Shown: positions 6,473-42,324 of the stretch, in pieces
Layout of the letters: each line of letters starts with the position of its first letter
How positions within the stretch are numbered: position 1 is the first letter of the stretch
IMG/VR virus record: IMGVR_UViG_3300032116_000001
Coordinates: 124,001-188,000 of that record
Strand: one strand, 5' to 3'
Length of the DNA: 64,000 bases
Translations under genes and position numbers: made by a program
Notes under the pieces: model-generated
Seen by the model: only the letters and a program-made list of their open reading frames with translations
The model's database searches: none
Told to the model about the DNA's origin: nothing

Positions 6473-6538
6473 ATAATTGTGCAATATGTCTTTAAAGACA
6501 TAAGTGAGGTTTTGCTTTTGGCCAATCAAGAATCAATA

Positions 6539-13433: not shown

Positions 13434-13488
13434 TTTCATTTATTATTCCTTTTTATTGAATAATAAATGAAAAAAAATATTTTTTTGC

Positions 13489-13513
13489 AGGTGTTAAAGC
13501 TATTTTTAGTGAA
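13489..13513 (+). promoter_or_regulatory. AGG-N19-GAA motif before the scaffold-decoration-capsid genes
   Basis: AGG tgttaaagctatttttagt GAA. Confidence 0.65.
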
Positions 13514-13568
13514 GTCTTTAAGCAGACACTCACTTGTTAATGCAAAACATAATCAAGTGAGGAGCCTA

Positions 13569-27405: not shown

Positions 27406-27837
27406 ATGAATAACCGCACCGTTGTCGCCAGATTAATTGAAATTGCAAATATACTAGATTCCCATAATTTAGTAAATGAATCCGATGAAATTACACGAAT
27501 TGCTCAAGATTTTTCATCTTCTCCGTCTTTTGATTATTTGCCAGGCACTAACTCTTACGACATTGAGGGTCCAGATGATTATCGAGCAGATGACATGATG
27601 ATTCGCGGCGATCAATTTGAGTCAGAAAATGAACTTATGATGGAGCTTGCAAGAGCCGAAGCTTTTGATCGAATAAATCAAATTGTAAATAATCCCAACC
27701 CAAGTGAAAAAGAAATCGAAGAATATAATAGACTGCTTCAATTGTTGGATGGAAGTCGATCCGAAGAAGATTTTAAACAAAATATTCTTGATAGCGGTGC
27801 AAATATTATTGATGATGAAGACATTTTTAATAATTAA
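27406..27837 (+). CDS. Acidic hypothetical protein with N-terminal helical tag
   Basis: MNNRTVVARLIEIANILDSHNLVNESDEITRIAQ; agga SD. Confidence 0.75.
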   Translation: MNNRTVVARLIEIANILDSHNLVNESDEITRIAQDFSSSPSFDYLPGTNSYDIEGPDDYRADDMMIRGDQFESENELMMELARAEAFDRINQIVNNPNPSEKEIEEYNRLLQLLDGSRSEEDFKQNILDSGANIIDDEDIFNN

Positions 27838-28157
27838 TCTATATCAGAATCATCTGGTTTCATAAAAAAATCAAGATCAAATGGGGGCAAAATTAACCTA
27901 TGAGGATCAAGGCTTTGTTCTTGGTCCTCATCTTTGGTTTTAATATCTAATGAAAAATCAAAATGGCTGCCAAGCGATGATATAATGTCGGCCATATTAT
28001 TCAGCGACGCTGCATATAAGTCCATGATTGTTGCCCACCAATACAAAGCCTCTTCTTGACTTATGTCTTTTGTGCCATATTGATGTATTTTTTTAGCACA
28101 TTCTGACAGCATTATCGCTTTGTTTCTAAACATTTCAGCCGACTCTTCTGGCGTCAT
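27834..28157 (-). CDS. Hypothetical protein at the end of the tail operon (ORF open from 28202)
   Basis: agagga SD 9 nt before ATG 28157. Confidence 0.6.
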   Translation of the reverse strand: MTPEESAEMFRNKAIMLSECAKKIHQYGTKDISQEEALYWWATIMDLYAASLNNMADIISSLGSHFDFSLDIKTKDEDQEQSLDPHRLILPPFDLDFFMKPDDSDID

Positions 28158-28177
28158 AGCTATTTTTCCTCTGTTGA

Positions 28178-28921
28178 TTATTGTTTTTTGTTTTTGCCCC
28201 ATATATTTTGAGGCAGTGTTGACATGAAAGATTCTTCTATCCCTTGTGGTCTTTCCTTATTTGTCTGATTGTTTGGGGAAGTTATTCCCAAAACATCACT
28301 TCTTGCTGTTAAGATTAATTGTATTCTTTCTAAATCAGATGCGCTAATACTTCTAAATTCTTCTTTTGTCCACTGCACTCCCTTTAGCCAAAAGTCAACT
28401 TCTATAACAATCGGGGGCACTGGATGGCCACTTTGGGCCTTGCCTTCAAAATAAGATTGTGCAGCTGAATATAAAAATGCTGCCTCTGAAGAGCCCAGTG
28501 TAGTATAAGACTGATATTTCCCCCAAAGATCATTAATAATATCGTCTTGTATAATCTTTACAATATTACCGCTTGAATCATTTAAGAAATATTTTGCTTC
28601 TGGTTCGATTTGACACACCCAGATTATTGCTTTTTTTAAAATTTCTCTTTTTTCAAATTCTCCAGAAAAATAATTACTGTCTTTTCCATTTGCCCTAAAG
28701 GCTTTAAGTTCTATTTCTTGAGCTTCAAACCAACTTAACTCTCTTGCACAAAAAACAGCAATGTTATTGTTTTGTTTAACAGTTATTAAAAACTGGCCAT
28801 CTTCAACGCTTGGAAGTTGGCTTTGGATATCATTAATTTTATTAATGTATTCTGTATTATTTTCTGATGATTCGATCATTTGTTGTGTTAATTTAATAAC
28901 TTCTTCGGAATTATAATTCAT
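28178..28921 (-). CDS. Putative tail assembly chaperone
   Basis: Follows the tube-like genes; ARELSWFEAQEIE..KREILKKAIIW pattern; assignment mainly positional. Confidence 0.45.
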   Translation of the reverse strand: MNYNSEEVIKLTQQMIESSENNTEYINKINDIQSQLPSVEDGQFLITVKQNNNIAVFCARELSWFEAQEIELKAFRANGKDSNYFSGEFEKREILKKAIIWVCQIEPEAKYFLNDSSGNIVKIIQDDIINDLWGKYQSYTTLGSSEAAFLYSAAQSYFEGKAQSGHPVPPIVIEVDFWLKGVQWTKEEFRSISASDLERIQLILTARSDVLGITSPNNQTNKERPQGIEESFMSTLPQNIWGKNKKQ

Positions 28922-30279
28922 GCTTCTTCATCGTCTCCAATTTCTTCTTCTTTTTCTTCTTTTTTGCCTGGAGTTGCTTGCAAATCGTTACTGCTTAGCC
29001 AAAACTCTGATATTGGATAGTCCAACGCACTTGTCGTAAAGCCTTTTTGTATTGACAATGGGGCAGCGCGAGCTAAGAATTCAAACGTGTAGAAAAACCC
29101 AGATTTCAAATTACCTTCGACTTTCACGGGCTGAAACTCTACGTTTGGCATTGGAAAAAACCAAATTGAACCAAAATACAAAGTAAGAGCACTGGTGTTG
29201 GGTATTTCAAAATCATTTGATCGAGACCAGAACACCAACGAGCCCTTAACTGATCTTTTTGTAAGCGAAGCAAACCTTGGGCCATTTTGATCTGTTCGTG
29301 ATAAATTTAGCGCCGTAAAAGCAAATTCCCAGTTTTGGTTTAATGATATATCAGCTGTCACAAGTCGTTGTTCTGCGTTTAACGCTTCAGTGGAAATCAC
29401 TGTGTCCATCGCCTCGATCATTTCATCGGCGCTATTATATAGCTTAAAGTCAACAAGCGCATCCATCGTTGACGCAACTCTATAGTGTCTATAATCTTCT
29501 GTCGCCTCCTCATCAGAAGCGATAGGGCTTTCTTCAGGATCGGAATCATCTGACTGTATTGTCACCAATTGTGGCTCAATGTCAATAACCTCAGGCGAGA
29601 CACTAATCATTTTTTCAGAAATAATTGATCGCCCCCCAACAATATCAATAGATATGTTTACAGGACTTAATTGACCAGTGCCGCTACAGGATATTCTTAC
29701 TGATTCAACAAAAGAAGGACCAAAATAATACTCATTTGATGGCGTGGACGCAGAAATCATAATTGGGTAGCCTGGATATACAATGGCTTTGTAAAAAACC
29801 AATTCCCCTGGCTCAGTTTCTGCAGCTTGGCGCTCAACTATAATGTTTCCATCTTCATCTGTTTTAATAATTGGGGCTGGAATTAGTGGGGAAAATTTTA
29901 AATTTGCTTTCTGAACATATCCAGTGGCTAATGGCCTTGTAAAAGGAGACACTCCAAACGGCGTGGGAAGATTTTCATAAACAGAGCTTCCTGTTGTAAT
30001 GGTAAACCCCTCCACCCATGCGGGATGCCAATTTGGGTCATCTTTTTTAATTTGCCAATACCCGTTGCCGTCATAAACTTCTTCGCCGATTAGTTCGGCC
30101 ATGCGATATAGGTCCCATACATACGCATCTCTAAAAGTTTTACGCCTTCCTCGACCGCCCACATCCATTCTTAAATGATTTGTATCCGCCCAAATACCCT
30201 TGTTCGCCTCTGTAAATGAGATTACGAACAGGGATTGCTGCGCGACAGCTGAATTTAAGATAATGGTTTTTTGTGTCAT
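28918..30279 (-). CDS. Tail tube-like protein, paralog 2
   Basis: Aligns by eye with 30690..32048 (TKRSVKGSLVFWS vs QGRKISGTLRYKS); acidic insertion. Confidence 0.55.
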   Translation of the reverse strand: MTQKTIILNSAVAQQSLFVISFTEANKGIWADTNHLRMDVGGRGRRKTFRDAYVWDLYRMAELIGEEVYDGNGYWQIKKDDPNWHPAWVEGFTITTGSSVYENLPTPFGVSPFTRPLATGYVQKANLKFSPLIPAPIIKTDEDGNIIVERQAAETEPGELVFYKAIVYPGYPIMISASTPSNEYYFGPSFVESVRISCSGTGQLSPVNISIDIVGGRSIISEKMISVSPEVIDIEPQLVTIQSDDSDPEESPIASDEEATEDYRHYRVASTMDALVDFKLYNSADEMIEAMDTVISTEALNAEQRLVTADISLNQNWEFAFTALNLSRTDQNGPRFASLTKRSVKGSLVFWSRSNDFEIPNTSALTLYFGSIWFFPMPNVEFQPVKVEGNLKSGFFYTFEFLARAAPLSIQKGFTTSALDYPISEFWLSSNDLQATPGKKEEKEEEIGDDEEA

Positions 30280-30282
30280 GTT

Positions 30283-30678
30283 TTAACTCGTGGCTTTTAT
30301 CCACTCTTTTGATATTGCTTTAATTATATCATACTGCATTTGATTAACGGTTTCGCTGCGTATGGGGATTGGATTGCCGTCAATGTCAGTCGCGGTCCAG
30401 TGTTTAACAAATCTTAAAACAATTAATTTACAAAACAAACTATATCTTACCAAAGGTCGCCCCGTTATATGATTAATTATAGTTGATTCCTCCAATACCT
30501 TACTCATGTTGTCATAGTCTCTTCCTGCACAATGGCACACCAAAGAGCGTACTGTTTCACTTTTTTCGACATTGCTTGGGAGTATCTTTACGCCTGTGAT
30601 AACACCATCAGAATTCGCAATGTGTTCATATTTAATCGTTATTTTAAAAGTTATCTTCGGGTCTACAAATATATTCAT
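30283..30678 (-). CDS. Small tail-operon protein, possible chaperone
   Basis: 131 aa between the two tube-like genes; FVKHWTATDIDGNPIP resembles tail chaperone motifs. Confidence 0.5.
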   Translation of the reverse strand: MNIFVDPKITFKITIKYEHIANSDGVITGVKILPSNVEKSETVRSLVCHCAGRDYDNMSKVLEESTIINHITGRPLVRYSLFCKLIVLRFVKHWTATDIDGNPIPIRSETVNQMQYDIIKAISKEWIKATS

Positions 30679-30689
30679 ATTATGCTCTT

Positions 30690-32048
30690 TTAACTAAACT
30701 TAAGCTCTGGGAACTCATCGTAATTTTCTGAAATCATTGTCCATTGAATTTCTCTTGATTGGTCAGACTTAACGTCTCCTTCGCTTGTGGATAATGACCA
30801 CGCTATCTCTGGCAAACTTATTACAAAGTCACTATAATTGATTTCGATTCCTCCGCCATTAATGCTTGATGGCCCAGCTAGTCTCTCCATTAGTGTGAAC
30901 GGGGCTATTGGGCTTTTGTATCTTAAGGTCCCTGAAATTTTTCGACCTTGAGAAACTAGCGCAAATGGATAAGAGTTTTCTAATTGACGTATTGATGGGT
31001 CATTTGATAATGAATGTGCCGCGTAAATTTCTTGAATTTGATTATCAATAGTTATACTGATTCCTGTAACAGTTGAAGAATAATCAAGGCCTTGAAAGCC
31101 CGCAAATAATGGATGATTCTGAGGTGTGGCCAATCCAAAATTGCCTATATTTGCTGATTTTGGATTGATAGTAATCAACATAGGGTCTATTTTTCTTGTG
31201 GGAGGAAGTGTAGAAAAAGCAGTTAATATATTTTTTTGTTGTGTTCTTAAGTCAATTTGTTTGTCTCGCCAAAGCCTTAGTGAGGCAAATTCAACTGTGA
31301 CATAAACTCCTGATTCTATGTCTGCGTCTATTGTTATTTTATTAACTAAGCATGGCGAAAAAAGACCTTCGCGCAAAGATAGCAAAGAAAATGCAGGTTC
31401 GCGAACGGGGGCGGAGCCAGTGGTTATGCGTGCGCTTAAAATTGTGTTGTTCGGCGTATGCGGATGGGCAGTTGGCGAGGAAAAAGTAAGCGTTCTATTC
31501 GTTTTATTTACTCCTGAAACCAAGACTGTTTCTGATGTTTGTCCAGAGCCCGCGGCAGCCAAAATACTCATCTGAAAAGGTGTTGGAATTGCCAAAAAAT
31601 CAGATATATTATCAACAACAAAACTTGAAGCCCCTGAAGAAACTGCAACAGATGGGGTGTTAGTTACTATTCTACTCATTGCGGCTGTGGCGGTGCCCCA
31701 CCTAGCCAAAAGCGCAGCATCCCACAAGGCTGCAAACGCCCAGTCTATATATCCAGTCACGCTTGCCCTTATTGGCATTTTAATTGTAGCCCTAATAGTA
31801 ACAGGGCTTGTCACAAATGCATTGGGGTCGGCTCCCTCGCCTGCTCGTCGGTTTTTGGGATCAGAACTTTGATCAATTCTTAATGATAATGATTCTGCAG
31901 CTATTAAATACTCTTTTGCAATACTTCCTGCATTCGCATCTATGTCTGACTCTCGCGGAGCATCTCTTATAATGGCCAATAAATCAGAATAACCTGGTTG
32001 AAAACCAATGGCAGCATATGTGCTTGACATTGTATTAAGCCAACTCAT
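30690..32048 (-). CDS. Tail tube-like protein, paralog 1, with inserted beta-rich segment
   Basis: Tube-like pattern (LIAAESLSL, SPVTIRATIKMP, ISITIDNQIQE, RKISGTL); position in the tail operon. Confidence 0.6.
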   Translation of the reverse strand: MSWLNTMSSTYAAIGFQPGYSDLLAIIRDAPRESDIDANAGSIAKEYLIAAESLSLRIDQSSDPKNRRAGEGADPNAFVTSPVTIRATIKMPIRASVTGYIDWAFAALWDAALLARWGTATAAMSRIVTNTPSVAVSSGASSFVVDNISDFLAIPTPFQMSILAAAGSGQTSETVLVSGVNKTNRTLTFSSPTAHPHTPNNTILSARITTGSAPVREPAFSLLSLREGLFSPCLVNKITIDADIESGVYVTVEFASLRLWRDKQIDLRTQQKNILTAFSTLPPTRKIDPMLITINPKSANIGNFGLATPQNHPLFAGFQGLDYSSTVTGISITIDNQIQEIYAAHSLSNDPSIRQLENSYPFALVSQGRKISGTLRYKSPIAPFTLMERLAGPSSINGGGIEINYSDFVISLPEIAWSLSTSEGDVKSDQSREIQWTMISENYDEFPELKFS

Positions 32049-32049
32049 T

Positions 32050-34431
32050 TTACGGGGCAGTCTCCACTGTTATAAAATCATAAATACTCCAGTCTATCTG
32101 CCCATTGGGGCTGACTGTAAGGTTTGATCCTGGTCGAACACTAACATCATCAACTCTGTCAAAAAGCTGATTGGAAGTTCCCAAAAGAAATCTTCTTCCT
32201 CTTGGTGTTCCCTTGGGAATAACTGTCGATAAAACAGTCGGTGTTCCTGAAGAGCCATTTCTAGCGGTCACTGTGACAATAAGTTCATTTTTCGTTTCAG
32301 CAGATTCAACTTCGTTTAATAGTGGATTCCCGTCTAAGCCATATCGTGGCCCAGTTGATGGAATCTCTTCGATTTCTGGTACAAGCACAGAAAGTCTGCG
32401 CGGGATTCGGGATATTCTTCCCGTTATTTTGATTCCTCTTTTTAAAGGAAATTGCGCAGACAGGCCATTATCTAGCCATCCCCTTAGCTTAAAATATGCT
32501 GTTCTACTAGACACAGGGCTCCATGTTGTATTATCTGCAGAAGTTGATATTTGGTTTGTTCCAGAAGTTGCCACAGCAATTTTTACAGAGCCTCCCACTG
32601 GGGCTGCTGTGCGTCCAATTTTAAGCCAATAGGTTGCAGACGGTGTTACAGCAACATTAAATTTCGCTGTAAATTCCTGGGGCTCGGTGGTTAGGCTGCC
32701 GAAAGATATATTTTCAGCTGTCGCTAACAATGTCCCTGGATTACCTGCGGTATCAGAATGTAAAGTAACTACAAGGCCTTGCGAAGTGTTTGTAATTGCC
32801 GCGGTGGCGGAAAGAAGAATGCTTATGCCCCCTAAATAAGAGCCACTTTGTGGCACAATCTTGATTGCATAATAAGCAGATGATATTGTGTCATGCTGAC
32901 TTACTGCTACGGGTGTGTTTGTAAATTTAGGCACACCTGTGATTTCGTTTACATTTGTCAGCCTAAACTCATTAAGTTCACCGACCAGATTTGATCGTTT
33001 ATATACATGATAAAAAAGCGCCCCAGACACAGAATTCCAAGACAACTCATTTAAAAAATAATCAGGAACTGAACTTTCCGACAAGACTGAGGTATATGTT
33101 GGTGGTGTTTCGCCCGCTGGTAAAACTGCAGAAACTCCATAGACATGTGTTCCTCTGCCAAGAGCCGAATCCTCGTCTTTTGCTAAAACAGAATTTGAAA
33201 CAACACCACTCACAGACGACAATCCCAAAACAACATTTGTTTGTGAAACAAGGTCGCCCCTAAATAAAGCAAAAGTGTGTTGTATGTCGTCATTATAAAG
33301 ATCATAATAAGCTCGCGCAAAAGAGCTTGGAAATTCTATTCTTTCTAGCCCAGCAAATGATATGCCCTTGCCAAAATAGCTTGTTGGCCTAAACGGTTGC
33401 TGGCTCCAGAATTGACGAAAACTTGTTTGTGGACTGTCGGCTTTCCTGCTTGTATACTTTTTTATAGCCTGAATTAACCCAGCAGTGCTCGCATTATCTC
33501 TTATAGCTCGTAAAGCCTGTCTTGTTGCTGCACATGTGCTAGAAATTAGTGCGCCATCACTAGCCGAAAACACTGTGTTATTTGATCCTGGGGCGGGCCA
33601 GTAAATAGCAGTGCTTCTGACAGACCAGTTCGGGTCGGTGCCTGAAAGTCTTGGGTCGTTTGGGTTTATAATTAAAATATCGGCAATAGGAAGCCAGCTT
33701 GAGGGCATGGGTGGATAATAATTAAAATCATCTGGATCGCTTCCAGCCCCTGCCTGAGGCAGTCCGCACACAGCTCTTATTTTGGGTTCATAAATAAATC
33801 TTACAGGGGTGCCGACATGAATCGTAGATGCCAAAGTCCCATAGCCCGAGCCATTATAAAATCCTGGATCAATAATCAATGCTGTTTTGTCTTCATTGAT
33901 TCCAGAAAAAATCATAAATGTTGTCCCTACATGAGCCTGTATCGGGAAACCAAGTTCTTCAATCACGGTGGCATCTGCTACAAATAGTTGTGACGTCCCC
34001 GAAAGAGAAGACGACGATACATTTGTGCTATAAATTCTTGTAGCTCTGCGTGCTTCTTCAATTGGGAAGCCGAGTCTTATGCCATATTGATCGGTGTTGC
34101 CGTAAGATTGCGCAAAGTCTCTTCTTATAGGTATCCTTTGAGACAATATTGAAAGCCTTGACCCATTAAATCCAATTTCGCCTGGCCCAATAGTAATAAA
34201 GTAAGGATCATTAGACTCATCATAAGTAATTTGGAAGCCCTGCGGATCGGTTTCAATTATTCCAAAATAAGGCAAAGAATTATTGGCGAGTCTTTCTAAA
34301 TTTCTTATCTCAAAGAGAGCAGTATTAGGAATTGTCTCGCTGCCTATACCATCGTTTAATGCTTCATGAATTTCGCCAATGGCTCGTGCCACTTCAAAAA
34401 TAATTTCTTCACTTTTTGCTGTTATTGCCAT
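32050..34431 (-). CDS. Virion structural protein (tail/baseplate-associated)
   Basis: 793 aa, beta-rich; carries a beta-sandwich segment related to one in 35331..39305. Confidence 0.6.
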   Translation of the reverse strand: MAITAKSEEIIFEVARAIGEIHEALNDGIGSETIPNTALFEIRNLERLANNSLPYFGIIETDPQGFQITYDESNDPYFITIGPGEIGFNGSRLSILSQRIPIRRDFAQSYGNTDQYGIRLGFPIEEARRATRIYSTNVSSSSLSGTSQLFVADATVIEELGFPIQAHVGTTFMIFSGINEDKTALIIDPGFYNGSGYGTLASTIHVGTPVRFIYEPKIRAVCGLPQAGAGSDPDDFNYYPPMPSSWLPIADILIINPNDPRLSGTDPNWSVRSTAIYWPAPGSNNTVFSASDGALISSTCAATRQALRAIRDNASTAGLIQAIKKYTSRKADSPQTSFRQFWSQQPFRPTSYFGKGISFAGLERIEFPSSFARAYYDLYNDDIQHTFALFRGDLVSQTNVVLGLSSVSGVVSNSVLAKDEDSALGRGTHVYGVSAVLPAGETPPTYTSVLSESSVPDYFLNELSWNSVSGALFYHVYKRSNLVGELNEFRLTNVNEITGVPKFTNTPVAVSQHDTISSAYYAIKIVPQSGSYLGGISILLSATAAITNTSQGLVVTLHSDTAGNPGTLLATAENISFGSLTTEPQEFTAKFNVAVTPSATYWLKIGRTAAPVGGSVKIAVATSGTNQISTSADNTTWSPVSSRTAYFKLRGWLDNGLSAQFPLKRGIKITGRISRIPRRLSVLVPEIEEIPSTGPRYGLDGNPLLNEVESAETKNELIVTVTARNGSSGTPTVLSTVIPKGTPRGRRFLLGTSNQLFDRVDDVSVRPGSNLTVSPNGQIDWSIYDFITVETAP

Positions 34432-34436
34432 TATAA

Positions 34437-35324
34437 TTACACCACATATCCAAGTTCTGTTTCTAAATATTCACGCAATCGTGAAGGCATTTCCACAATA
34501 GATGTTTGCCAATAACTCAAGAAATTTGGTTCCCATGAATCCAATTGCACCCATTGATCCACCATGACCTTTATTGATTCATTTACCTGGTTGTATTGTT
34601 CTTGATTTATAGGAGCTGATTGTATTAGTGCTGGTACTAAAAACGCTCCAAGCGCTTCCTCGGCGAAGCCCAATGCGCCTCGGGGCTTTCTTTTATCGAC
34701 TGGAATTACATTTATTCTATTTTTAGAACTATTATTGGCATCAAAATAATCTATATCTATCAAAAACTTTATAATTTCAACAGTTTTATATTCTGTCGCC
34801 CATCCTGGGGGAGCGGGAACTGTGGTCTGGCCGATTATGTTTTGGCTAATCCAACTAATCGCTTCTGATTGTGAAACATCCTTGAACATTAACAATGGAT
34901 TTCCGCCACCACTGCCGCGTAAAACTTCCACCTGTACATCAAAACTCGAAACTCCCATGTTTTTCCATGCCCTTAGGAAAACACCACCAAATGCATACGC
35001 ATTTTGAATAACCGTAGAGCCCAGCAAGCTCGTGGGATTAAAGGCTTGTTCAGGCGGTGATGATGTATGTATTTTGTTTGGTACTTCATCATTTAAGTAT
35101 CTGGCAAGACCAGCGCCGATGATCAACTCAGCATTAGCATTGATTGCCGATCTTGTTTCTACAGTTGCTAATCCATAACATAAATCTAAATCTCTTTCTT
35201 CCAGCGGAGCGCCTAACCCGTACTCTTCGATTGCCAATGACGTATCAACCATGGTCGCAACCCTGTCAAGGCTGCGAATTACAGAGTCAAGTATGTATGC
35301 TGTATATGGGTTCGGAGATGACAT
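34437..35324 (-). CDS. Hypothetical protein in the tail operon
   Basis: 295-aa ORF tightly packed between structural genes. Confidence 0.7.
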   Translation of the reverse strand: MSSPNPYTAYILDSVIRSLDRVATMVDTSLAIEEYGLGAPLEERDLDLCYGLATVETRSAINANAELIIGAGLARYLNDEVPNKIHTSSPPEQAFNPTSLLGSTVIQNAYAFGGVFLRAWKNMGVSSFDVQVEVLRGSGGGNPLLMFKDVSQSEAISWISQNIIGQTTVPAPPGWATEYKTVEIIKFLIDIDYFDANNSSKNRINVIPVDKRKPRGALGFAEEALGAFLVPALIQSAPINQEQYNQVNESIKVMVDQWVQLDSWEPNFLSYWQTSIVEMPSRLREYLETELGYVV

Positions 35325-35330
35325 ATGTAT

Positions 35331-38300
35331 TTAAACACTCCTTATAACTATTTTGTCACCAGGTGGTGCGCCATTTGTGGGGGTGGTTATATCTGGCATT
35401 TCTTTACCCACTGATAAATATGTTATTCTTTGAATTTTATCGGAATCAATAATTAAAGGCGCTGGTGTTGGGTCCACAGACGTTGATGGTCCAATTTCGG
35501 CCAAAGTCTGCGAAGATGATTGCCAGCGAATTTGCAATCTTTGTGATCCTGTAGAATGGAAATGTTCCACAACAATTCTTTGTGGAGTGGTATTAGAAAG
35601 AAGCCCCATCACATAATTAAATGTATTAAGAGAGTCATTTAGCCACTCATCTAAGACCAAAACATCATTAATATACACTCTAACCCCCTGGCTAGATGTA
35701 ACACTCAGTGTATAACTTTCGTTATAAATTGGAGTGAAAACTCCCTCTATTCTGGTGTTTATGTTTTCATTCTGTCCATCTAAAGTGAAATTTGTGTAAT
35801 TAATCGATGTTATAATTTCGTCTGTTGTGGGCGAAATGGATGTGTCTAGGTTATTGTAATCAAGAGATGATTTTTTCCACCATTGTGCACGCCATGATGG
35901 TGATGAATTAAAGGTGTGCAAAAGTGTTTTTATGATTCCATCCACAGAATATTTAACACAAACATGTATATCATTTGAAAACTTAGCATACCTCCATTGT
36001 GTCCCATCGTGGAAGGCACGAGGATAGATGGATAGTTGTGATGGCGGGTTTATATCTTTGCATGTGTAAGCCCAATGACCTTCGACTTTATAGACAGGGT
36101 TCGACTCTCTTTCTTTGTTTGGCGGGGGGAGATATGCTGTTATATTTGGAGTATCTCTATTAAAAGCGCCATAAACTTCATTAGATGTTTGGTAAAACTT
36201 AATCCAAACTTCTCCAGCCTCATTTATCCAATTATTGTCTACATCGGGTTTTGAAATATTTTCATTTACACTTGTTACATAATCAAACTCAATGGTGCCT
36301 CCAATTTCCAAAGATGTCTTTTCAAGCACAATCCAGTATGTATTGTTGTTAGAGAACGTATACGGAAGTGAAAAAGTTATTTCCGTAAATCCTGAAGTTG
36401 ATAACTCGCCAAATGAAACTCCATCACCAGAGATTATCCTTTGGCCTGGAAGGTCATTGTTATTGGCATAAATATGCGGTATCAATTTTGAAGAGCTGGA
36501 ATTAAGCAGTTCTGTAAATCCCGAGTCTAAATCTACTTGCAATCGAAGCGAAAAACTTGATGCGAATGTCTTTTCTGTTGTTTCAATCTTAAATGCGATA
36601 TATTTACTAAAATTCCCCGTAGAACCCCCAGATGTTTGGTTTAAAGATGGGTCAAGAACCTCAACAGATTGTGTTCCGTACTGTTCTAAGTCTCCTGCTG
36701 ACAAGCCCGTTGGCGCTATGGTAAATGAGTCGGCTCTAACCTCCTCGACAGATGGATTGGGGTCGTCCTTAACCGCATTTGCAATGCCAAAATAAGGATT
36801 TAAATTAATTTTCCAATAAGGAACGTCAGAAAATGTATATTTCGATACAGAAACGCCAAGGTTTCTTAAGCCTACCCACAATTCTGGATACTGATTAAGA
36901 TCAATTATTAGAAACTCTCCGCCATCATTAAGAAAATCTTGAACCTCTTCATCAATCTCATCCTCAGTGTAACCCTGATTTGCTAGTCTTTTTCTAAACT
37001 GCTCTTCCGTTTCTCTGGTTTCGTCTGGAGGAGATACAACCTTGGTGCGAATCAATCTGGAGTCTCCCATGGTTAAATCAGGTATAATACCAGCGTAGCC
37101 ATGAAGCCTCCATGAATCAATGGTTTCTAGCGTGCCTGGTGCTCGATTGGCCTGGTCTTCACTTGTTCCTCTTCGATAATATCCCGTTGTACTTTGTCCT
37201 TTTAATTCTCTATTGGCGTATTCTCCATCTGTTAAAAAGAACATGCTCGCCATAACAAAAAGGTCTTTTTGAAGAACGTTTTCATCACTGTCTTCAAGCT
37301 CAAACCTAATTGTGTAATCTTGGCCAAGGGCAATTCCTGATTTATTGGGATCAATTGCTTCGCATTGGCTAGATGGTTCCATATAGATTTCAAAATTATT
37401 GGCTATATTTATTTTTTGTTTTGTTAATGAGAGAGCATTAGAATTTAATCGACCCATTTCCGTTGATGGCGGTGCCGCTGATAAGTCTTCTATTATAGCA
37501 ATCCCAGGGCTATTGAACGGTATTGCTCTAGGAGGGGCATTATCGGGGTTTTGAAGGTCTGTGTCAAAGGGGTTTTTTAATAATCCCCTGAATATCTTTG
37601 ACTGCAAAGATGCAGAGTCTAGTAGTTGGTTTTGCTTTGGCGTTATGGTTTCTGGAAACCTTGATGCTGGTAATAATACATCAAAGGCGGCTGATCTTGT
37701 AGCACCTTTGATATCCAAGTTCCTAAAAGTTTGTAACAAATTGTAAACCTCAGGAAGAATTATGGATGCAAGGAGGGGGTCTCCATGAGGTTTTTGTGCA
37801 AATGTTTTTATCTCTTGGTCTGCCCATATTATAGAAAGGCCAGCTAAAATATTTCTCTCACTTCCCGTTTCTAAGTCGGCTCTCATAATTGTACCTGATC
37901 CGCTCGATGAAGTGCCCGCGACTAAATTACTTATACTTCCTGGTGCCTTTGCGAGAACCAATCTTGAAATTAAAACATAATCTCTTGGAACTCGTGGAAA
38001 ATATTTGCAAATATCCCAATTAGCTGGCCAAAGCTCGCTGGGCACTGGAGGAGAAGATATGATTAAATATTCAGCTATGGGGCCGTCACTTGGTGTGCCC
38101 TGTGGCGTGGCGCAAATGATGACAGGCACGGCTTCTGCATCACGCGGGGCTGAATATCCGATCATGCTATTGCTTAGCCCAATGACTGGCACTTTCGGAA
38201 AATCTTCAAGAAGTTCGTATTTGGGCGGAATTTCTGGATTAGAATATTCTCCGTCTTTAAAAAGAAAATGCGTCCTGTTGCTGGCCACTAAATACTTGTT

Positions 38301-39305
38301 ATCATCATTGATACTTGTTGGTTTCCATGAAAGACTTTCATAAATTCTAGTGTTAAAGAAATTTTTTCGTGGCCAAAATATAATATCGTCAAGGTCGGGG
38401 TTTATAGTTGTCCCTGATGTGTAAGTATATGTTGGTAAATCGTCTTGACTCCCCCAATACATTGCTATATGCCACCAAGAATCAGGCCCCCAGGTGAAAC
38501 TTGGGTCATTGACAGTTCTTAAAGTTACATTATAGCCATTTGTAGTTTTTTGAATTGTATATGCCAAGACGCTTAGTTCTTCATATAAACTAGGCTCGGC
38601 ATCAAGTTCTTGCCAGTCTGATCCAGATTTCTCTTGAACTAGGCCAATGTGTGAATAAAACCTGACGTCTAACGGGGCGTCATTTAAGTGGTTGGAATGT
38701 TTGTGTCCGTCTACAGCATCATTAGGAATAAAAAATTCAATTTGATATGTGTGGTCATATGTGGTTATCCCTGGGTTGTAAAAAGATACCCACGTCGCAC
38801 TTTCGTAAAATGGAACTTCCTCATAATCGGTGCCATCCCAGCGCACTGGGTGGTTTTTGGTTAGTCTTTGTGAACCTCCTGAAGGCTCACCGCCGTTGGT
38901 TGTGTAAATGGGGTTACCGTCATCATCTCTGGGAATCCACCCAGACCAAGCATTATATTTCCAGACCCCCCAGCCCTCTGGAGATGGCGGACCATAATAA
39001 TAAGGGCTCCAGAACTCACCCGAAGGTATTTCTGGGAAATCAGATGCAAAATTTAATTTAACATCAATCTCACCACCTTGTATTCCAAGGCCAACGGGGT
39101 CTTTTTCTCCGAAAAGCAGCAATCCCTCAGCAGAATCTTCGTCATGAAATAGCGTTGCTGTTCTGAGTCTGCAAAAGATAGTTTCCAGGGCCAGAAGAGC
39201 GCCTGGATTTTTCGAAGTGTCTCCTATTTTTGACACTATCCTTTCTCTTGCTCGCCCCAAAGTTTCGGCTATAATCTGCAATCCCTCGCGATTAATCTCG
39301 CTCAT
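35331..39305 (-). CDS. Large tail-associated protein with C-terminal PA14 domain
   Basis: 1324 aa; RIEGVFTP..YTLSVTSSQGVRVYINDVLVLDEW..IVVEHF..GSQRLQIRW is PA14-like. Confidence 0.7.
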   Translation of the reverse strand: MSEINREGLQIIAETLGRARERIVSKIGDTSKNPGALLALETIFCRLRTATLFHDEDSAEGLLLFGEKDPVGLGIQGGEIDVKLNFASDFPEIPSGEFWSPYYYGPPSPEGWGVWKYNAWSGWIPRDDDGNPIYTTNGGEPSGGSQRLTKNHPVRWDGTDYEEVPFYESATWVSFYNPGITTYDHTYQIEFFIPNDAVDGHKHSNHLNDAPLDVRFYSHIGLVQEKSGSDWQELDAEPSLYEELSVLAYTIQKTTNGYNVTLRTVNDPSFTWGPDSWWHIAMYWGSQDDLPTYTYTSGTTINPDLDDIIFWPRKNFFNTRIYESLSWKPTSINDDNKYLVASNRTHFLFKDGEYSNPEIPPKYELLEDFPKVPVIGLSNSMIGYSAPRDAEAVPVIICATPQGTPSDGPIAEYLIISSPPVPSELWPANWDICKYFPRVPRDYVLISRLVLAKAPGSISNLVAGTSSSGSGTIMRADLETGSERNILAGLSIIWADQEIKTFAQKPHGDPLLASIILPEVYNLLQTFRNLDIKGATRSAAFDVLLPASRFPETITPKQNQLLDSASLQSKIFRGLLKNPFDTDLQNPDNAPPRAIPFNSPGIAIIEDLSAAPPSTEMGRLNSNALSLTKQKINIANNFEIYMEPSSQCEAIDPNKSGIALGQDYTIRFELEDSDENVLQKDLFVMASMFFLTDGEYANRELKGQSTTGYYRRGTSEDQANRAPGTLETIDSWRLHGYAGIIPDLTMGDSRLIRTKVVSPPDETRETEEQFRKRLANQGYTEDEIDEEVQDFLNDGGEFLIIDLNQYPELWVGLRNLGVSVSKYTFSDVPYWKINLNPYFGIANAVKDDPNPSVEEVRADSFTIAPTGLSAGDLEQYGTQSVEVLDPSLNQTSGGSTGNFSKYIAFKIETTEKTFASSFSLRLQVDLDSGFTELLNSSSSKLIPHIYANNNDLPGQRIISGDGVSFGELSTSGFTEITFSLPYTFSNNNTYWIVLEKTSLEIGGTIEFDYVTSVNENISKPDVDNNWINEAGEVWIKFYQTSNEVYGAFNRDTPNITAYLPPPNKERESNPVYKVEGHWAYTCKDINPPSQLSIYPRAFHDGTQWRYAKFSNDIHVCVKYSVDGIIKTLLHTFNSSPSWRAQWWKKSSLDYNNLDTSISPTTDEIITSINYTNFTLDGQNENINTRIEGVFTPIYNESYTLSVTSSQGVRVYINDVLVLDEWLNDSLNTFNYVMGLLSNTTPQRIVVEHFHSTGSQRLQIRWQSSSQTLAEIGPSTSVDPTPAPLIIDSDKIQRITYLSVGKEMPDITTPTNGAPPGDKIVIRSV

Positions 39306-39309
39306 CGTA

Positions 39310-40080
39310 TTACACCGCCTCTATCGGAACTGAATCAGGTCCTGCATTAACAATGGGCACCAGCTCCCTGGCGGTCAGGGTAAATTGACCTTGTTTGAGT
39401 AGTTGTTGCCCGCGGCCATCGTCTGATGGCTTGGCCTCAGATATTTTAACCCCATAAATCAATCGTATTGGCGAAAGCAAGTCTTTTTGCATTTGCTTAA
39501 TGTTAAGTCTTGCTTCTTCGGTTAAATTTGTTACAGACGTGTCGTTTCTGACTGCCTCGTACATTCTCAGAAAGGCATCGGCAGCAATACCAGACGCGAG
39601 CGGGGCTGGAGACGGTGAAGAGTGTGTTTCAGCCCAAAGAGTTGAAAATGCACTTTGGGCCGCTGTAACAAAAGGAGAAAGTATTGTATTGTGCTGATTT
39701 GTAAAATGCTCGGGTGTAAGTGCCCATTTTTGGCAAATTGGGCACAAATCCATAATCCACATTACTCTATAATCTTTTAGTGAATAATAAACCAATCTTG
39801 CAAGTTCTTGCACTAATTTTTCAGAATTTTCTGTTTGGTTAGAGCCCGCGGATATTCCAATAGTGATTCTGTGCTCAATTTCTTGCATACCAAAAGCCGC
39901 ATCGCCAATATTTTCCGAAGAACCATAAATAATTATAGACAAATTTGACGGCAGAACATCTCTATCGCCTAAATGCCATCCTTCAAGAACATGGTCGTAA
40001 ACAACAACATGCCCTTCTGCGTTTTTTGGCATTTTGTAAAATAAAATGCCCCTTATGGTTTCATAAATTTTTTCCAACAT
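39310..40080 (-). CDS. Putative tail terminator/completion protein with inserted C2H2-like zinc motif
   Basis: Directly after the head-tail adaptor; CPICQKWALTPEHFTNQH insert. Confidence 0.5.
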   Translation of the reverse strand: MLEKIYETIRGILFYKMPKNAEGHVVVYDHVLEGWHLGDRDVLPSNLSIIIYGSSENIGDAAFGMQEIEHRITIGISAGSNQTENSEKLVQELARLVYYSLKDYRVMWIMDLCPICQKWALTPEHFTNQHNTILSPFVTAAQSAFSTLWAETHSSPSPAPLASGIAADAFLRMYEAVRNDTSVTNLTEEARLNIKQMQKDLLSPIRLIYGVKISEAKPSDDGRGQQLLKQGQFTLTARELVPIVNAGPDSVPIEAV

Positions 40081-40107
40081 AATTAAAATGCGATCTTTGT
40101 CTTAAGA

Positions 40108-40602
40108 TTATTGATTTTGACCTTTTGACCGCCCGCCTTCGGCTGGATTTTTTGGTGCGCCACGCAATGTTGATCTCACAAATCTATCACCCTTTGTTGA
40201 TCTTTGTCCCGACAATCTGATTTCTCCATTTTGAATTCTAACAAGCTCATTCATAGCCCAATCAAATCGTGTTTTTTGTGCTTCGCTATATTGTCTATCG
40301 GCACCCTGAAGGGGCTGGTTGTAATACATTTGAGCTGACAAAATAGCACAAATAACAGGTATTGGGTGAGGGTAGCTAATCTCGCCTCCATTGTTTTTTT
40401 GCACTAAAGGAACGTCATAAATAACCCCTATGTTTGCATCTATCTGACTAGACGCTTCTTCAATAAAAAAATCCAAATCAATGTTTTTGGCCGACTCTGG
40501 TGATGGATTTCTAAAATTAGGAATAGGGTTGTCGCCCTCCAGTGTAATATTCGGCGGGAGATATTGTTTTACATCGTTTATTGTGCAGTAGCGTCTTGCC
40601 AT
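40108..40602 (-). CDS. Head-tail adaptor (Mu gp36/DUF1320-like)
   Basis: YCTINDV..FIEEASSQID..YDVPL..ICAILSA..RFDWAMNELVRIQNGEI. Confidence 0.75.
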   Translation of the reverse strand: MARRYCTINDVKQYLPPNITLEGDNPIPNFRNPSPESAKNIDLDFFIEEASSQIDANIGVIYDVPLVQKNNGGEISYPHPIPVICAILSAQMYYNQPLQGADRQYSEAQKTRFDWAMNELVRIQNGEIRLSGQRSTKGDRFVRSTLRGAPKNPAEGGRSKGQNQ

Positions 40603-41297
40603 TATTTATTTACCCCTTGCTGATTCGCATCATCTCGTCTTAGGTATTCAGGAGTGTATTCTACCCCCTGTCCAGTGGGCAGCAGCCCCATGGCTTCTAT
40701 GTCTTTTCTTCCAATCATAGTAAATGCATTAATTTTTTCAAGATCGGTGCCTGAAGCCGCTCCCGACGTTATAAATCTATGAAAGTCAACATCTATGTCT
40801 TGGAAGCCCCCTGATTTGGCGCAGTAGATTTCCACAGCATCGGGAATTGATGTCCCTTTTGCTAATTTGTTGATTTCTTGAGCCTGTCGCTTACCCACAT
40901 TCGCAATCATAACAAGCCCATTATTTTTGTGCGCAATTTCACACGCTTGGCTAAGGGAAAGATTTGGAGGCAATGAATCTTTAATATTAAAAGCAATAAT
41001 ATGAGCCTTGTCTGTGCATGTGTATTCTTGGCCTGGGACCACATGCAAATCTAAGTTCTGCTCTCTGCATAGTTGCTGAGCACGCCAGCCAGCTTGCGGG
41101 CCATAATTATTCACCACGCCGATGACATCAAGTCCCTTGACTATAGCGGCTGTTAAAATAGATTTTATGGATGAATCCAAGTCATTTTGATTGGTAAAAT
41201 TTTCAACACGATCAATATACACGCGCAAATCCACCCGCAACACATGTTTGCGGAGGGCTATACACTCTCGTGCGGTGGAATACCATCTATTAAACAC
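40602..41297 (-). CDS. PHP-fold protein lacking most metal-binding histidines
   Basis: VDLRVY, GLDVIGVVNN, VVPGQE, HIIAFN, DAVEI follow the PHP motif order; N-terminus MFNRWYSTAR. Confidence 0.65.
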   Translation of the reverse strand: MFNRWYSTARECIALRKHVLRVDLRVYIDRVENFTNQNDLDSSIKSILTAAIVKGLDVIGVVNNYGPQAGWRAQQLCREQNLDLHVVPGQEYTCTDKAHIIAFNIKDSLPPNLSLSQACEIAHKNNGLVMIANVGKRQAQEINKLAKGTSIPDAVEIYCAKSGGFQDIDVDFHRFITSGAASGTDLEKINAFTMIGRKDIEAMGLLPTGQGVEYTPEYLRRDDANQQGVNK

Positions 41298-41319
41298 TTC
41301 AGAAACTCCTATTGGTATT

Positions 41320-41344
41320 TTCTGAAGAAAATTAACTTAAACCT
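41320..41344 (-). promoter_or_regulatory. AGG-N19-GAA motif heading the neck/tail operon
   Basis: - strand AGG tttaagttaattttcttca GAA. Confidence 0.65.
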
Positions 41345-41930
41345 ATCGCCGCTCACCACAGTCGGGGCAGAATTTTTCTGCCCCCGAAAACTTATAACCA
41401 CATTGATAGCAAAATTTTATCAATGACACTCCACAATGAGGGCAGAATTTTGCATTTTTAGGATAATCATTGCCACAAGAAGCACACCCAATATTAATAG
41501 AATCTTTTGCGATTTGAACGGGCGGGGTGGTTTTTTTGGCAATTTCTTTTGAGATATTTACCACAGAATCTTCCATAAATTCGGACAATGTTGTTGGTAT
41601 ATTGTCGAATATGGATTTGTTTTCAGCGTGGTTATATTGATCTTCATTAATAAATTCCGATTCATCAGCTTCTGGCTCTTCGCTTGGAAAAACATGGTCT
41701 GATATAAATTTTTGCATAGCTGGGTGGTCAATGAGGCTTTGTGAATCAGAAGCATTTATATTGCCACTTTCATCTATAATGACTTTCATTCGATCATGAG
41801 GAAGCACATTGTTATTTGAATCCTGCCCCAAAACTGTGTGCCCAAACCTATTTAATCCAAAAGAAGATTGAGCCGCTTTTTCTGGATCGACAAAAGAATG
41901 CCTATGTATTGGTTTTTCGTCTTCGGTCAC
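41343..41930 (-). CDS. Double zinc ribbon protein
   Basis: C-terminal CASCG..CPHCG..CYQCG..CPDCG. Confidence 0.75.
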   Translation of the reverse strand: MTEDEKPIHRHSFVDPEKAAQSSFGLNRFGHTVLGQDSNNNVLPHDRMKVIIDESGNINASDSQSLIDHPAMQKFISDHVFPSEEPEADESEFINEDQYNHAENKSIFDNIPTTLSEFMEDSVVNISKEIAKKTTPPVQIAKDSINIGCASCGNDYPKNAKFCPHCGVSLIKFCYQCGYKFSGAEKFCPDCGERR

Positions 41931-41973
41931 TTTTTCCTATCGTGGCGCATTAGCCATTAATGTTTATACAGAA

Positions 41974-42324
41974 TTAGTTTTTACCTTTGGTTTCGCTTTT
42001 CTTCCAGCTAAAGCCATCAATATCAACCCCAAGGTCTTTAACTGAGTTCATTATAGCGTGCATAATTTCTGCCTCGGAAACCCCCTCGGGCACCTTAAAA
42101 GTTACACTTGTTGTATGAGTTTCGCGATCATCTTTAGGCGGAGCTTCTGTGATTTTTGCAAAGGGTTGTATCATCGGATTGTAAGGCATGTCATGCATGA
42201 TGTTGTCATCGCCACTTGATAAATACTGAGCTATTCGGTGAAGCTCCTTAGACATCGGGCTTCCTTTTTTATCCAGTGAATCGGCGACGTTTGTAATTCT
42301 ATTTGCAATATTTTTGTTGCTCAT
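41974..42324 (-). CDS. Small hypothetical protein with N-terminal helical tag
   Basis: MSNKNIANRITNVADSLDKKGSPMSKELHRIAQ; aaagga SD. Confidence 0.75.
   Translation of the reverse strand: MSNKNIANRITNVADSLDKKGSPMSKELHRIAQYLSSGDDNIMHDMPYNPMIQPFAKITEAPPKDDRETHTTSVTFKVPEGVSEAEIMHAIMNSVKDLGVDIDGFSWKKSETKGKN

What the first reader, a model, noticed from the sequence alone, without database searches (positions are those of the whole stretch)
27406..42324. Second shared tag: ~30-aa helical A-x-x-L-D...RIAQ module on otherwise unrelated proteins
Seen: MNNRTVVARLIEIANILDSHNLVNESDEITRIAQ (27406), MSNKNIANRITNVADSLDKKGSPMSKELHRIAQ (42324) and MKNQLIKMLKLARYYDESGQFRKADSI (23516). It also occurs internally as MHLDSEKIVKYASYLDLQERFCEADEMDLKILRIS (19949) and at the C-terminus of ORF 3..722 (LDRMLLKISSMEQSGDYKNADIEM). 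Sequence after the module is unrelated. The three N-terminal copies each have an upstream AGG-N19-GAA motif, and two end in RIAQ. Inference: a helical docking or packaging module, possibly removed by the head protease.
Basis: partly seen in the sequence, partly recalled or inferred. Interest (0 to 1): 0.65.

Follow-up and report, generated by a model that had tools for sequence, protein, structure and literature searches.

The report
Shared TPR-like leader tag, huge phage
About twenty otherwise unrelated proteins of this 379-kb phage, and over two thousand protein clusters in metagenomes, carry the same undescribed ~40-residue two-helix tag, usually at the very start; it is probably a common docking signal, perhaps for loading cargo into the phage head.

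Summary
Iteration gives 19 solid and about 5 marginal copies. Outside the tag the carriers share no similarity. The other two (42324 and the C-end of ORF 3..722) are supported only by pairwise similarity to one other tag.

AlphaFold predicts a helix-turn-helix hairpin (pLDDT 92.9). Its residue pattern is that of one 42-residue TPR_10/TPR_12 repeat (hhalign 96.9%), but it occurs as a single copy. No Pfam or PHROG family covers it.

Related IMG/VR contigs carry 4-11 copies each. Phage G, the closest isolate, has none. An exhaustive search finds 2,181 clusters, mostly with the tag at residues 1-38, followed by unrelated acidic, disordered sequence (67% versus 7% identity).

Carriers include an ART-PolyVal enzyme, a PcfJ-like protein and a GH108 lysin. 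Several lie beside the portal, protease, scaffold and capsid genes. Capsid targeting, as with the T4 CTS, is the best guess (about 0.4) but is untested. Removal by the protease is also untested. The AGG-N19-GAA motif is genome-wide and not tag-specific.

The parts
27406..27519 (+). N-terminal tag (aa 1-38) of the 143-aa protein P0001 (ORF 27406-27837). This is the short-helix-2 variant ending in RIAQ, followed by an acidic, disordered-looking tail.
   Evidence: held-out E 7e-4; E 7.7e-12 with profile A2, in which it was a training row
42214..42324 (-). Divergent N-terminal tag (aa 1-37) of the 116-aa protein P0002 (ORF 41974-42324). It has a 5-residue deletion at the turn and the start of helix 2 and ends in RIAQ. 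It is the first gene of a minus-strand operon that holds a head-tail adaptor homologue.
   Evidence: Not recovered by family profiles (0.25-0.31), but significantly similar to the P0001 tag (0 of 2000 shuffles)
23409..23516 (-). N-terminal tag (aa 1-36) of the 217-aa protein P0003 (ORF 22863-23516, TTG start with AGGAG upstream).
   Evidence: (held-out E 3.6e-5)
19937..20068 (+). Tag near the C-end (aa 323-366 of 403) of the ART-PolyVal ADP-ribosyltransferase-like protein P0004 (ORF 18971-20182).
   Evidence: PF18760, 3.8e-19; held-out E 1.4e-3
597..719 (+). Marginal C-terminal tag (last 41 aa) of an 802-aa ORF (genome 122314-124722; window part 3..722).
   Evidence: Profile E 0.3-0.75. Best local match to the C-terminal tag of L015, E 0.025
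6479..8941 (+). Context: portal protein gene.
   Evidence: phrog_16240, 1.6e-32; 30% identity to the phage G portal
9087..13367 (+). Context: 1426-aa ORF with a head-maturation protease domain at its N-end. It is a candidate processing enzyme and candidate receptor for the tag.
   Evidence: phrog_18299, 9.8e-17, residues 87-242
13467..15305 (+). Context: very acidic 612-aa protein between the protease and capsid genes. It looks like a scaffold and is a candidate receptor.
   Evidence: sequence; position. No family hit. The scaffold role is my inference
15986..16840 (+). Context: major capsid protein gene.
   Evidence: 48% identity to phage G gp27 major head protein, E 5e-105

Best explanation
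The module is a self-contained leader tag of about 38-43 residues. It folds as one helix-turn-helix hairpin with the residue pattern of a single 42-residue (TPR_10/TPR_12-type) tetratricopeptide repeat: l..iA..LD..G.y.EAD, then [KR][ILV]AQ. A single TPR-type hairpin has wide hydrophobic faces on both helices, so it should need a partner. About twenty different proteins in one phage carry nearly the same hairpin, so they most likely dock to one common, conserved phage-encoded partner.

My preferred reading is that the partner is part of the prohead interior: the scaffold-like protein, the long protease fusion protein or the capsid protein. On this reading the tag loads enzymes and small disordered proteins into the head, to be delivered with the DNA. 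The 10-residue capsid targeting sequence of the T4 internal proteins and Alt works in this way.

Shown: the tag exists, it is a hairpin, it is modular, it is under purifying selection, and it is widespread. Inferred: that it docks to something, and to what. Whether the head protease cuts it off is not known.
For: Existence and modularity:
- The tag is found well above controls.
- Carriers are unrelated outside it.
- 63 of 70 distinct copies in this genome and its relatives start at a Met, 4 are at the C-end and 3 are internal. One internal copy looks like a gene fusion.
- Orthologues keep the tag at the same end.

Fold:
- AlphaFold gives helix 5-21, a turn, and helix 25-41, with pLDDT 92.9.
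- The tag profile aligns to TPR_10/12 units with hhalign probability 96.9%, and it pulls such proteins out of 1.8 billion.

Selection:
- Tags in tandem paralogues are 53-74% identical in DNA, and 17-53% of identical residues use different codons.
- In 70 non-redundant metagenomic carriers, residues 1-38 are 67% identical pairwise, against 7% for residues 39-70. The sequence that follows is rich in D, E and P.

Link to the head and to injected proteins:
- Carriers include ART-PolyVal, PcfJ-like and GH108 lysin proteins.
- A conserved 153-aa tagged protein and two C-tagged proteins lie just upstream of the portal, protease, scaffold and capsid block, and this holds in relatives too.
- P0002 heads an operon with a head-tail adaptor homologue.
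- No carrier has a strong membrane segment.
- Relatives hold tandem arrays of small tagged genes. T4's diverse internal proteins likewise share only a conserved CTS (PMC3012670).
Against: - There is no virion proteome or any other experiment for this clade.
- No receptor was identified.
- The GH108 lysin has a weakly hydrophobic Gly/Ala-rich stretch right after its tag (Kyte-Doolittle 1.16). If that is a signal-anchor, the protein would be in the membrane and not in the head.
- One double-tagged metagenomic protein sits in an array of small genes next to helicase, UDG and thymidine kinase genes, which looks early rather than late.
- Cargo domains in metagenomic carriers (FHA, AP2, ferritin-like, RING-like) do not point to the virion.
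- Phage G has a 48% identical capsid protein but no tag, so the capsid protein alone is an unlikely receptor.
- Tags at both ends of one protein are common, which a cleaved N-terminal propeptide does not need.
Confidence: 0.4

Rival explanations
1. The tag is a co-assembly (oligomerisation) tag that works outside the virion. The hairpins bind each other or a non-structural hub. This gathers the carriers, many of which have long disordered acidic linkers and some of which have a tag at each end, into one complex or network in the infected cell, for example for host takeover.
For: - A single TPR-type hairpin has exposed hydrophobic faces on both helices (pattern).
- Double and triple tags occur on one protein.
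- Cargo domains such as FHA, AP2 and RING-like fit regulators.
- One carrier lies in a region that looks early.
- One carrier has a J-domain-like stretch, a weak hit only (Pfam DnaJ, E 0.07).
Against: - No direct evidence of self-binding.
- Several carriers cluster with head genes.
- ART-PolyVal and PcfJ domains are typical of proteins delivered with DNA (Pfam family names; my knowledge of the polyvalent-protein literature).
Confidence: 0.25
2. The tag is a handle for a chaperone, protease or other quality-control factor. It recruits a folding helper or sets the lifetime of its carriers, rather than their location.
For: - T4 propeptides are also reported to recruit chaperonin (PMC10052503 discussion).
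- J-domain genes lie near or on tagged genes.
- The tag is followed by disordered sequence.
Against: - Nothing specific points to a chaperone.
- A folded, highly conserved 40-residue hairpin is more than a degron needs.
- C-terminal and internal copies exist.
Confidence: 0.1
3. The conserved stretch acts at the DNA or RNA level, as a shared 5' cassette that promotes recombination or translation. The peptide itself has no role.
For: - Most copies are at the 5' end of genes and start with similar codons.
- Tandem arrays suggest duplication.
Against: - Copies are only 53-74% identical in DNA, with many synonymous differences at conserved residues.
- C-terminal and internal copies exist.
- The conserved positions are those of a packed hairpin.
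Confidence: 0.03
4. There is no real module: the likeness is chance or composition among helical N-termini.
Against: - Controls with reversed and shuffled ORFs never reach the real hits.
- The tag is conserved in relatives.
- 2,181 clusters match at E<=0.001 in 1.8 billion proteins.
Confidence: 0.01

Closest known systems
Capsid targeting sequence (CTS) of phage T4 internal proteins IPI-III and Alt
   Same: A conserved leader is shared by otherwise very diverse proteins, which in T4 serves to encapsidate them into the scaffolding core (PMC3012670). One T4 cargo, Alt, is an ADP-ribosyltransferase (my knowledge), and one carrier here is ART-like. Relatives of this phage hold tandem arrays of small tagged genes.
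   Different: The T4 CTS is about 10 residues, is not a folded domain, is N-terminal only and is cut off by gp21 (my knowledge). The tag here is a 40-residue folded hairpin, also occurs at C-ends and twice per protein, and neither packaging nor cleavage has been shown. I did not test sequence similarity.
N-terminal propeptides of head and ejection proteins of phiKZ-like giant phages (SPN3US, 201phi2-1)
   Same: In those giant phages many head proteins have N-terminal parts that the prohead protease removes (PMC10052503). Here a protease domain is encoded next to the portal.
   Different: Those propeptides are 20-254 residues long. No single tag common to unrelated proteins is described for them in the passages read. 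I saw no consistent cleavage motif after the tag here.
Tetratricopeptide repeats of the 42-residue TPR_10/TPR_12 (kinesin-light-chain) type
   Same: The residue pattern is the same over helix A, the turn and the first half of helix B (hhalign 96.9%, 31 columns). The tag profile retrieves such proteins. A hairpin fold is predicted.
   Different: TPR works as tandem arrays of three or more repeats that form a solenoid. The tag is a lone hairpin at a protein end, and Pfam TPR models do not detect it. The second half of helix B and the [KR][ILV]AQ end are specific to the tag.
Terminal coat-binding helix-turn-helix of scaffolding proteins (P22, T7, phi29) and cargo-loading peptides of encapsulins
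   Same: In both cases a short terminal helical element docks a protein to the inside of an HK97-fold shell, and it can be moved to foreign cargo (my knowledge).
   Different: Those elements sit on one scaffold or cargo family, not on twenty unrelated proteins. Binding of this tag to the capsid protein was not tested.
Polyvalent proteins and MuF-anchored effectors of phages
   Same: The effector domains ART-PolyVal and PcfJ occur on carriers, with a ParB-like nuclease (weak Pfam hit below its cut-off) as a neighbouring gene.
   Different: In those systems many effector domains are fused into one giant protein with a head-anchoring domain (my knowledge). Here the domains are separate proteins, each with its own small tag, and no MuF domain was found on carriers.

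Membership tests
TPR repeat (Pfam TPR_10 / TPR_12 type) | Helix-turn-helix unit of 34-42 residues with the TPR pattern of small and large residues | tested here: met
   AlphaFold hairpin with pLDDT 92.9. hhalign of tag alignment A2 against 22 TPR_10/12 units gives 96.9% over 31 columns. The units were taken from the tag profile's own hits, so this test is partly circular.
TPR repeat (Pfam TPR_10 / TPR_12 type) | Detected by the curated Pfam TPR models | tested here: not met
   No TPR repeat-family hit on any carrier at E<=0.1, nor on 100 metagenomic carriers at E<=0.001.
TPR repeat (Pfam TPR_10 / TPR_12 type) | Tandem array of three or more repeats forming a solenoid | tested here: not met
   Nearly all carriers here have one copy. 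Among the top 150 metagenomic hits, 78 have a single N-terminal copy.
T4-type capsid targeting sequence | Conserved leader shared by otherwise unrelated proteins | tested here: met
T4-type capsid targeting sequence | Carriers are found in proheads or virions | not testable with these tools
   No proteome exists for this uncultured clade. The closest isolate, phage G, lacks the tag.
T4-type capsid targeting sequence | Leader removed by the prohead protease at a defined motif | not testable with these tools
   A protease domain is present. There is no consistent motif after the tag. [KR][ILVM]AQ is enriched in the proteome (28 against 8.6), but its meaning is unknown.
T4-type capsid targeting sequence | Sequence similarity to the T4 CTS | not tested
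   No T4 sequence was fetched. The length and the predicted fold differ.
Scaffold-type coat-binding helix-turn-helix / encapsulin cargo-loading peptide | Binds the inner face of the capsid protein | not tested
Polyvalent / MuF-anchored phage effectors | Effector domains of the polyvalent-protein set | tested here: met
   ART-PolyVal on P0004 (3.8e-19). PcfJ on L005 (7.8e-14).
Polyvalent / MuF-anchored phage effectors | Covalent fusion to a MuF or other known head-anchoring domain | tested here: not met
   No such Pfam domain on any carrier.

The most novel reading that the evidence does not exclude
The tags of dozens of different proteins stack on each other, or on a scaffold helix, without covalent links, and form a TPR-like solenoid inside the prohead. 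This would be a 'split TPR' core that both builds an inner body and loads a varied set of enzymes for injection. It would be a new principle of cargo loading in giant phage capsids, and a portable 40-residue tag for packing foreign proteins.
Probability: 0.1. Interest if true: 0.85.

Novelty: new variant of a known kind. Interest (0 to 1): 0.62.

Why it matters
Shared leader tags are how T4 fills its head with anti-defence proteins, and they are used to pack foreign proteins into capsids. Here a different, folded, TPR-like tag marks about twenty proteins per genome in a large clade of uncultured huge phages. It has no Pfam, PHROG or literature record that I could find.

If it is a targeting signal, it gives a direct list of the proteins these phages send to one place. 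That list may be the injected arsenal: an ADP-ribosyltransferase, a lysin, a PcfJ-like protein and many unknowns. It would also give a compact tag for engineering. Even if the target is not the head, the tag defines a previously unseen interaction network in huge phages and annotates over two thousand 'hypothetical' protein clusters.

Tried and rejected
- Complex prediction on two copies of the tag (alignment A2) scored 0.26 against a mark of 0.42. The verdict was 'no answer', which is no evidence either way.
- Fold of a natural 72-aa protein with two tags (P0099) came out at pLDDT 65.6 from a single sequence, too poor to read how two tags pack.
- Foldseek of the hairpin against the PDB gave nothing at E<=0.001, only generic hairpins such as Rop.
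- ESM Atlas feature search of the tag gave no hit at 0.9 or above.
- The word-index protein search on the tag region found only the protein's own cluster.
- tblastn of two short tagged proteins and of carrier L001 against GenBank phages found no match. Megablast of the window region also found nothing.
- A literature search for tag strings found 0 papers.
- PDB sequence searches for the two large C-tagged proteins found nothing useful. My impression that they are sigma-like is unsupported and is dropped.
- A search for internal repeats in the 1426-aa protease fusion, as possible multiple receptor sites, found only two Zn-ribbon-like units and low complexity.
- A search for a tail sheath family in the genome found nothing.
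- I looked for a cleavage motif after the tag and found none that is consistent. An A-x-E pattern is frequent in metagenomic copies, but the linkers are acidic anyway, and it is absent from the copies of this genome.
- A Pfam hit to the T7 capsid assembly protein on one of 100 metagenomic carriers (E 1e-4) was not followed up. It may be compositional.
Full report
WHAT THE WINDOW IS

The window is bases 124,001-188,000 of a single 378,848-bp contig with 40.6% G+C. IMG/VR and CheckV class it as a complete virus record. It carries the following head genes:
- a portal gene (6479-8941, phrog_16240);
- a 1426-aa ORF whose N-end is a head-maturation protease domain (9087-13367);
- a very acidic 612-aa protein that looks like a scaffold (13467-15305);
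- a major capsid protein 48% identical to gp27 of Bacillus phage G (15986-16840).

Phage G is the closest isolate, with a portal 30% identical. Megablast finds no close GenBank phage. IMG/VR holds 48 related contigs whose portals are 48-75% identical. The genome is therefore an uncultured huge phage, a distant relative of phage G.

CHECK OF THE OBSERVATION

Two details differ. The ORF at 23516 starts with TTG behind an AGGAG. ORF 3..722 is the end of an 802-aa ORF that starts before the window.

I built an HMM from just these five segments and searched a simple ORF set of the whole genome (446 ORFs). It found eight further proteins at E<0.05. The best hit in reversed or shuffled ORFs was 0.19. 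Iteration converged on 19 domains. A six-frame search with a later profile added two short genes that my ORF set had missed (sequences).

In a leave-one-protein-out test, 16 of 22 candidate copies were recovered at E<0.005, with controls never better than 0.25. Two do not pass by profile: 42324 at 0.25 and the ORF 3..722 C-end at 0.75.
- The 42324 copy is nevertheless clearly like the 27406 copy. Its local score is 50, against a maximum of 43 in 2000 shuffles. It has a five-residue gap at the turn.
- The ORF 3..722 end gives its best local match to the C-terminal tag of another large protein, at E 0.025.

I call these two divergent or marginal members.

With the tags masked, no pair of the 21 carriers shows BLASTP similarity at E<=0.1. 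'Otherwise unrelated' is therefore correct.

The AGG-N19-GAA motif is upstream of all three N-terminal copies, at -79, -59 and -147. The same motif lies within 120 nt upstream of 43 of 446 genes, against 8-16 genes for other spacings, and of only 4 of 21 carriers. It is a genome-wide promoter-like element, roughly AGG-N17-[CT]AGAA[TA]A, lying 50-65 nt before starts. It also precedes the protease gene. It is not a property of the tag.

WHAT THE MODULE IS

The alignment gives the pattern l..l..iA..LD..G.y.EAD.l..v..[KR][ILV]AQ over about 40 residues. AlphaFold2 on the 36-row alignment predicts helix 5-21, a three-residue turn and helix 25-41, with mean pLDDT 92.9.

The spacing of small and large residues is that of a tetratricopeptide repeat. 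I first read this from the pattern. It was then borne out in two ways. The exhaustive profile search returned TPR_10/TPR_12 repeat proteins, which match many times each, alongside the phage proteins. A profile-profile comparison of the tags with 22 such units gave 96.9% probability over 31 columns. That second test is partly circular, because the units came from the tag's own hits.

The tag is not a canonical TPR domain. Pfam's TPR models do not detect it, and it is a single hairpin rather than an array. No Pfam or PHROG family covers it. The ESM Atlas gives nothing at 0.9 or above. The members of ten clusters that I looked up carry no name or only 'hypothetical protein'. A text search for tag strings finds no paper.

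WHERE IT OCCURS

In this genome most copies are at the N-end. Three copies looked internal in my longest-ORF calls, but each has a Met right at the tag start and is probably N-terminal too. Clear C-terminal copies are on the 262-aa, 802-aa and 601-aa proteins. There is also a copy near the C-end of the ART-PolyVal protein.

Taking this genome and the fetched parts of its relatives together, 63 of 70 distinct copies begin at a Met, 4 are C-terminal and 3 are internal. One internal copy, in the PcfJ-like protein, corresponds in a relative to the start of a separate reading frame. This suggests a gene fusion.

Related contigs carry 11, 9, 4 and 4 copies, including tandem arrays of three or four small tagged genes. 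Orthologues keep the tag at the same end. The 153-aa protein a few kb upstream of the portal (about 10 kb in this genome) has it at the N-end in more than 30 relatives. The 262-aa and 601-aa proteins have it at the C-end.

Phage G, a 485-kb uncultured phage, Vibrio phage D181 and virus Rctr197k share the portal type but have no copy.

In 1.84 billion representative proteins, 2,181 match at E<=0.001 and 85 at E<=1e-10. Of the best 150:
- 78 have one N-terminal copy;
- 13 have one copy at each end;
- others have two or three copies;
- about 20 are true TPR proteins.

SELECTION

In 70 non-redundant N-tagged proteins, residues 1-38 carry 2-4.3 bits per position (1.5-1.8 at the three most variable positions) and are 67% identical pairwise. 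From residue 39 on, identity is 7% and the sequence is rich in D, E, P and N. These are top hits of the profile, so the level of identity is biased upward, but the sharp edge is not.

Tags of tandem paralogues are only 53-74% identical in DNA, and 17-53% of the identical residues use different codons. The peptide is therefore what is conserved, not a DNA cassette.

WHAT THE CARRIERS ARE

Few carriers have known domains:
- ART-PolyVal (P0004; confirmed);
- PcfJ-like (L005);
- GH108 lysozyme with a peptidoglycan-binding domain (L006);
- a weak J-domain-like stretch (L002).

The rest are unknown. Many are small, with long acidic or Q/P-rich linkers. No carrier has a strong membrane segment. Among 100 metagenomic carriers the only Pfam domains are FHA, AP2, ferritin-like, RING-like, Zn-ribbons and one weak T7 scaffold-family hit.

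MECHANISM

Shown: a conserved, modular, folded hairpin at protein ends.

Inferred: it is a docking element for one common partner. The argument is that a lone TPR-type hairpin exposes hydrophobic faces on both helices, and twenty proteins in one cell carry almost the same one.

The most likely destination is the prohead interior, which would make this a capsid-targeting tag in the manner of the T4 CTS. In T4 only the CTS is conserved among very diverse internal proteins, and it serves to place them in the scaffolding core (PMC3012670). Giant phiKZ-like phages also remove N-terminal propeptides from head and ejection proteins (PMC10052503).

In favour:
- the ART, PcfJ and lysin cargoes;
- the tagged genes next to the head block and at the head of a neck operon;
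- the tandem arrays of small tagged genes.

Against:
- no proteome and no identified receptor;
- a weakly hydrophobic stretch after the lysin's tag, which might be a signal-anchor;
- a carrier in a region that looks early;
- cargo domains that look regulatory;
- double tags;
- absence of the tag from phage G despite its similar capsid protein.

I put capsid targeting at about 0.4, a co-assembly tag acting elsewhere at 0.25, and chaperone or turnover handles at 0.1. The remaining ~0.2 is an unknown partner of some other kind. DNA-level or chance explanations are close to excluded.

Removal by the head protease is an open question. The tag ends in [KR][ILV]AQ. This tetrapeptide is over-represented in the proteome (28 against 8.6 +/- 2.6). 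It occurs three times in the protease fusion and once in the scaffold-like protein. That is a lead, not evidence of cleavage.

TESTS THAT GAVE NOTHING

- The single complex job, on two tag copies, returned 'no answer'.
- The fold of a natural double-tag protein was too poor to use.
- Foldseek on the hairpin gave only generic hairpins.
- Short-query tblastn against GenBank phages found nothing.

VERDICT

The 'helical docking module' reading is supported as to structure and modularity. 'Packaging' is the best but unproven guess, and 'removed by the protease' is untested. The tag is an undescribed, widespread, single-hairpin TPR-like leader of a clade of huge phages. I rate it a new variant of a known kind (shared targeting leaders) and of moderate to high interest.

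Noticed in passing
genome-wide; in the window e.g. 8991 (+), 41344 (-), 42471 (-), and 59 nt before the start at 23516: There is a promoter-like motif AGG-N17-[CT]AGAA[TA]A about 50-65 nt upstream of starts. AGG-N19-GAA lies upstream of 43 of 446 genes, against 8-16 for neighbouring spacings. It precedes the protease gene and neck-operon genes, so it may be a phage-specific (late?) promoter.
   Followed up: partly
window 9087-13367 (+): The head-maturation protease domain is only the first ~250 residues of a 1426-aa ORF. The rest is helical, Ala-rich sequence and M/P/G/Q-rich low complexity, with two Zn-ribbon-like CxxC...CxxC units near the C-end (residues 1238-1264 and 1375-1401). This is an unusual protease fusion and could be a core or scaffold protein.
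   Followed up: partly
window 6479-8941 (+): The portal protein has a C-terminal extension (residues ~700-806) that hits an HNH endonuclease PHROG (phrog_559, E 1.3e-4).
   Followed up: no
window 20287-21456 (+): A transposase-like gene (phrog_506, E 1.7e-127) sits directly after the ART-PolyVal carrier, inside the head-gene region.
   Followed up: no
whole proteome; window 9087-13367 and 13467-15305: The tetrapeptide [KR][ILVM]AQ occurs 28 times, against 8.6 +/- 2.6 expected from shuffles. About nine are at or just after tag ends, three are in the protease fusion and one is in the scaffold-like protein. It could be a recognition or cleavage motif.
   Followed up: partly
L005 (genome 329190-331757) and L091 (relative G001): The PcfJ-like carrier has its tag in the middle (residues 590-633). 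In a relative, the part after the tag is a separate frame that begins near the tag. The internal position therefore looks like a fusion of two genes.
   Followed up: partly
L006 (genome 15307-16392): A GH108 lysozyme with a peptidoglycan-binding domain carries the tag at its probable N-end. The tag is followed by a weakly hydrophobic Gly/Ala-rich stretch and a Pro/Ala/Lys-rich linker. It could be a signal-anchor-release type lysin or a virion lysin.
   Followed up: partly
window 17044-18378, 18405-18971, 18971-20182 (+): Right after the capsid gene lie three separate genes: an endonuclease/HNH gene, a ParB-like nuclease gene (weak Pfam hit, E 8e-4, below the curated cut-off) and an ART-PolyVal gene. 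These domains are often found fused in phage 'polyvalent' proteins. Only the ART gene carries the tag.
   Followed up: no
L096 9616-12691 (metagenomic relative): Four consecutive genes each start with the tag, and the last has a second copy inside. A DnaJ-domain gene and an ART-PolyVal gene lie just upstream.
   Followed up: no
genome 239215-239901 and window 9087-13367: M/P/G-rich low-complexity stretches (runs of Met, Pro and Gly) recur in the protease fusion and at the N-end of a 228-aa protein with a marginal C-terminal tag.
   Followed up: no
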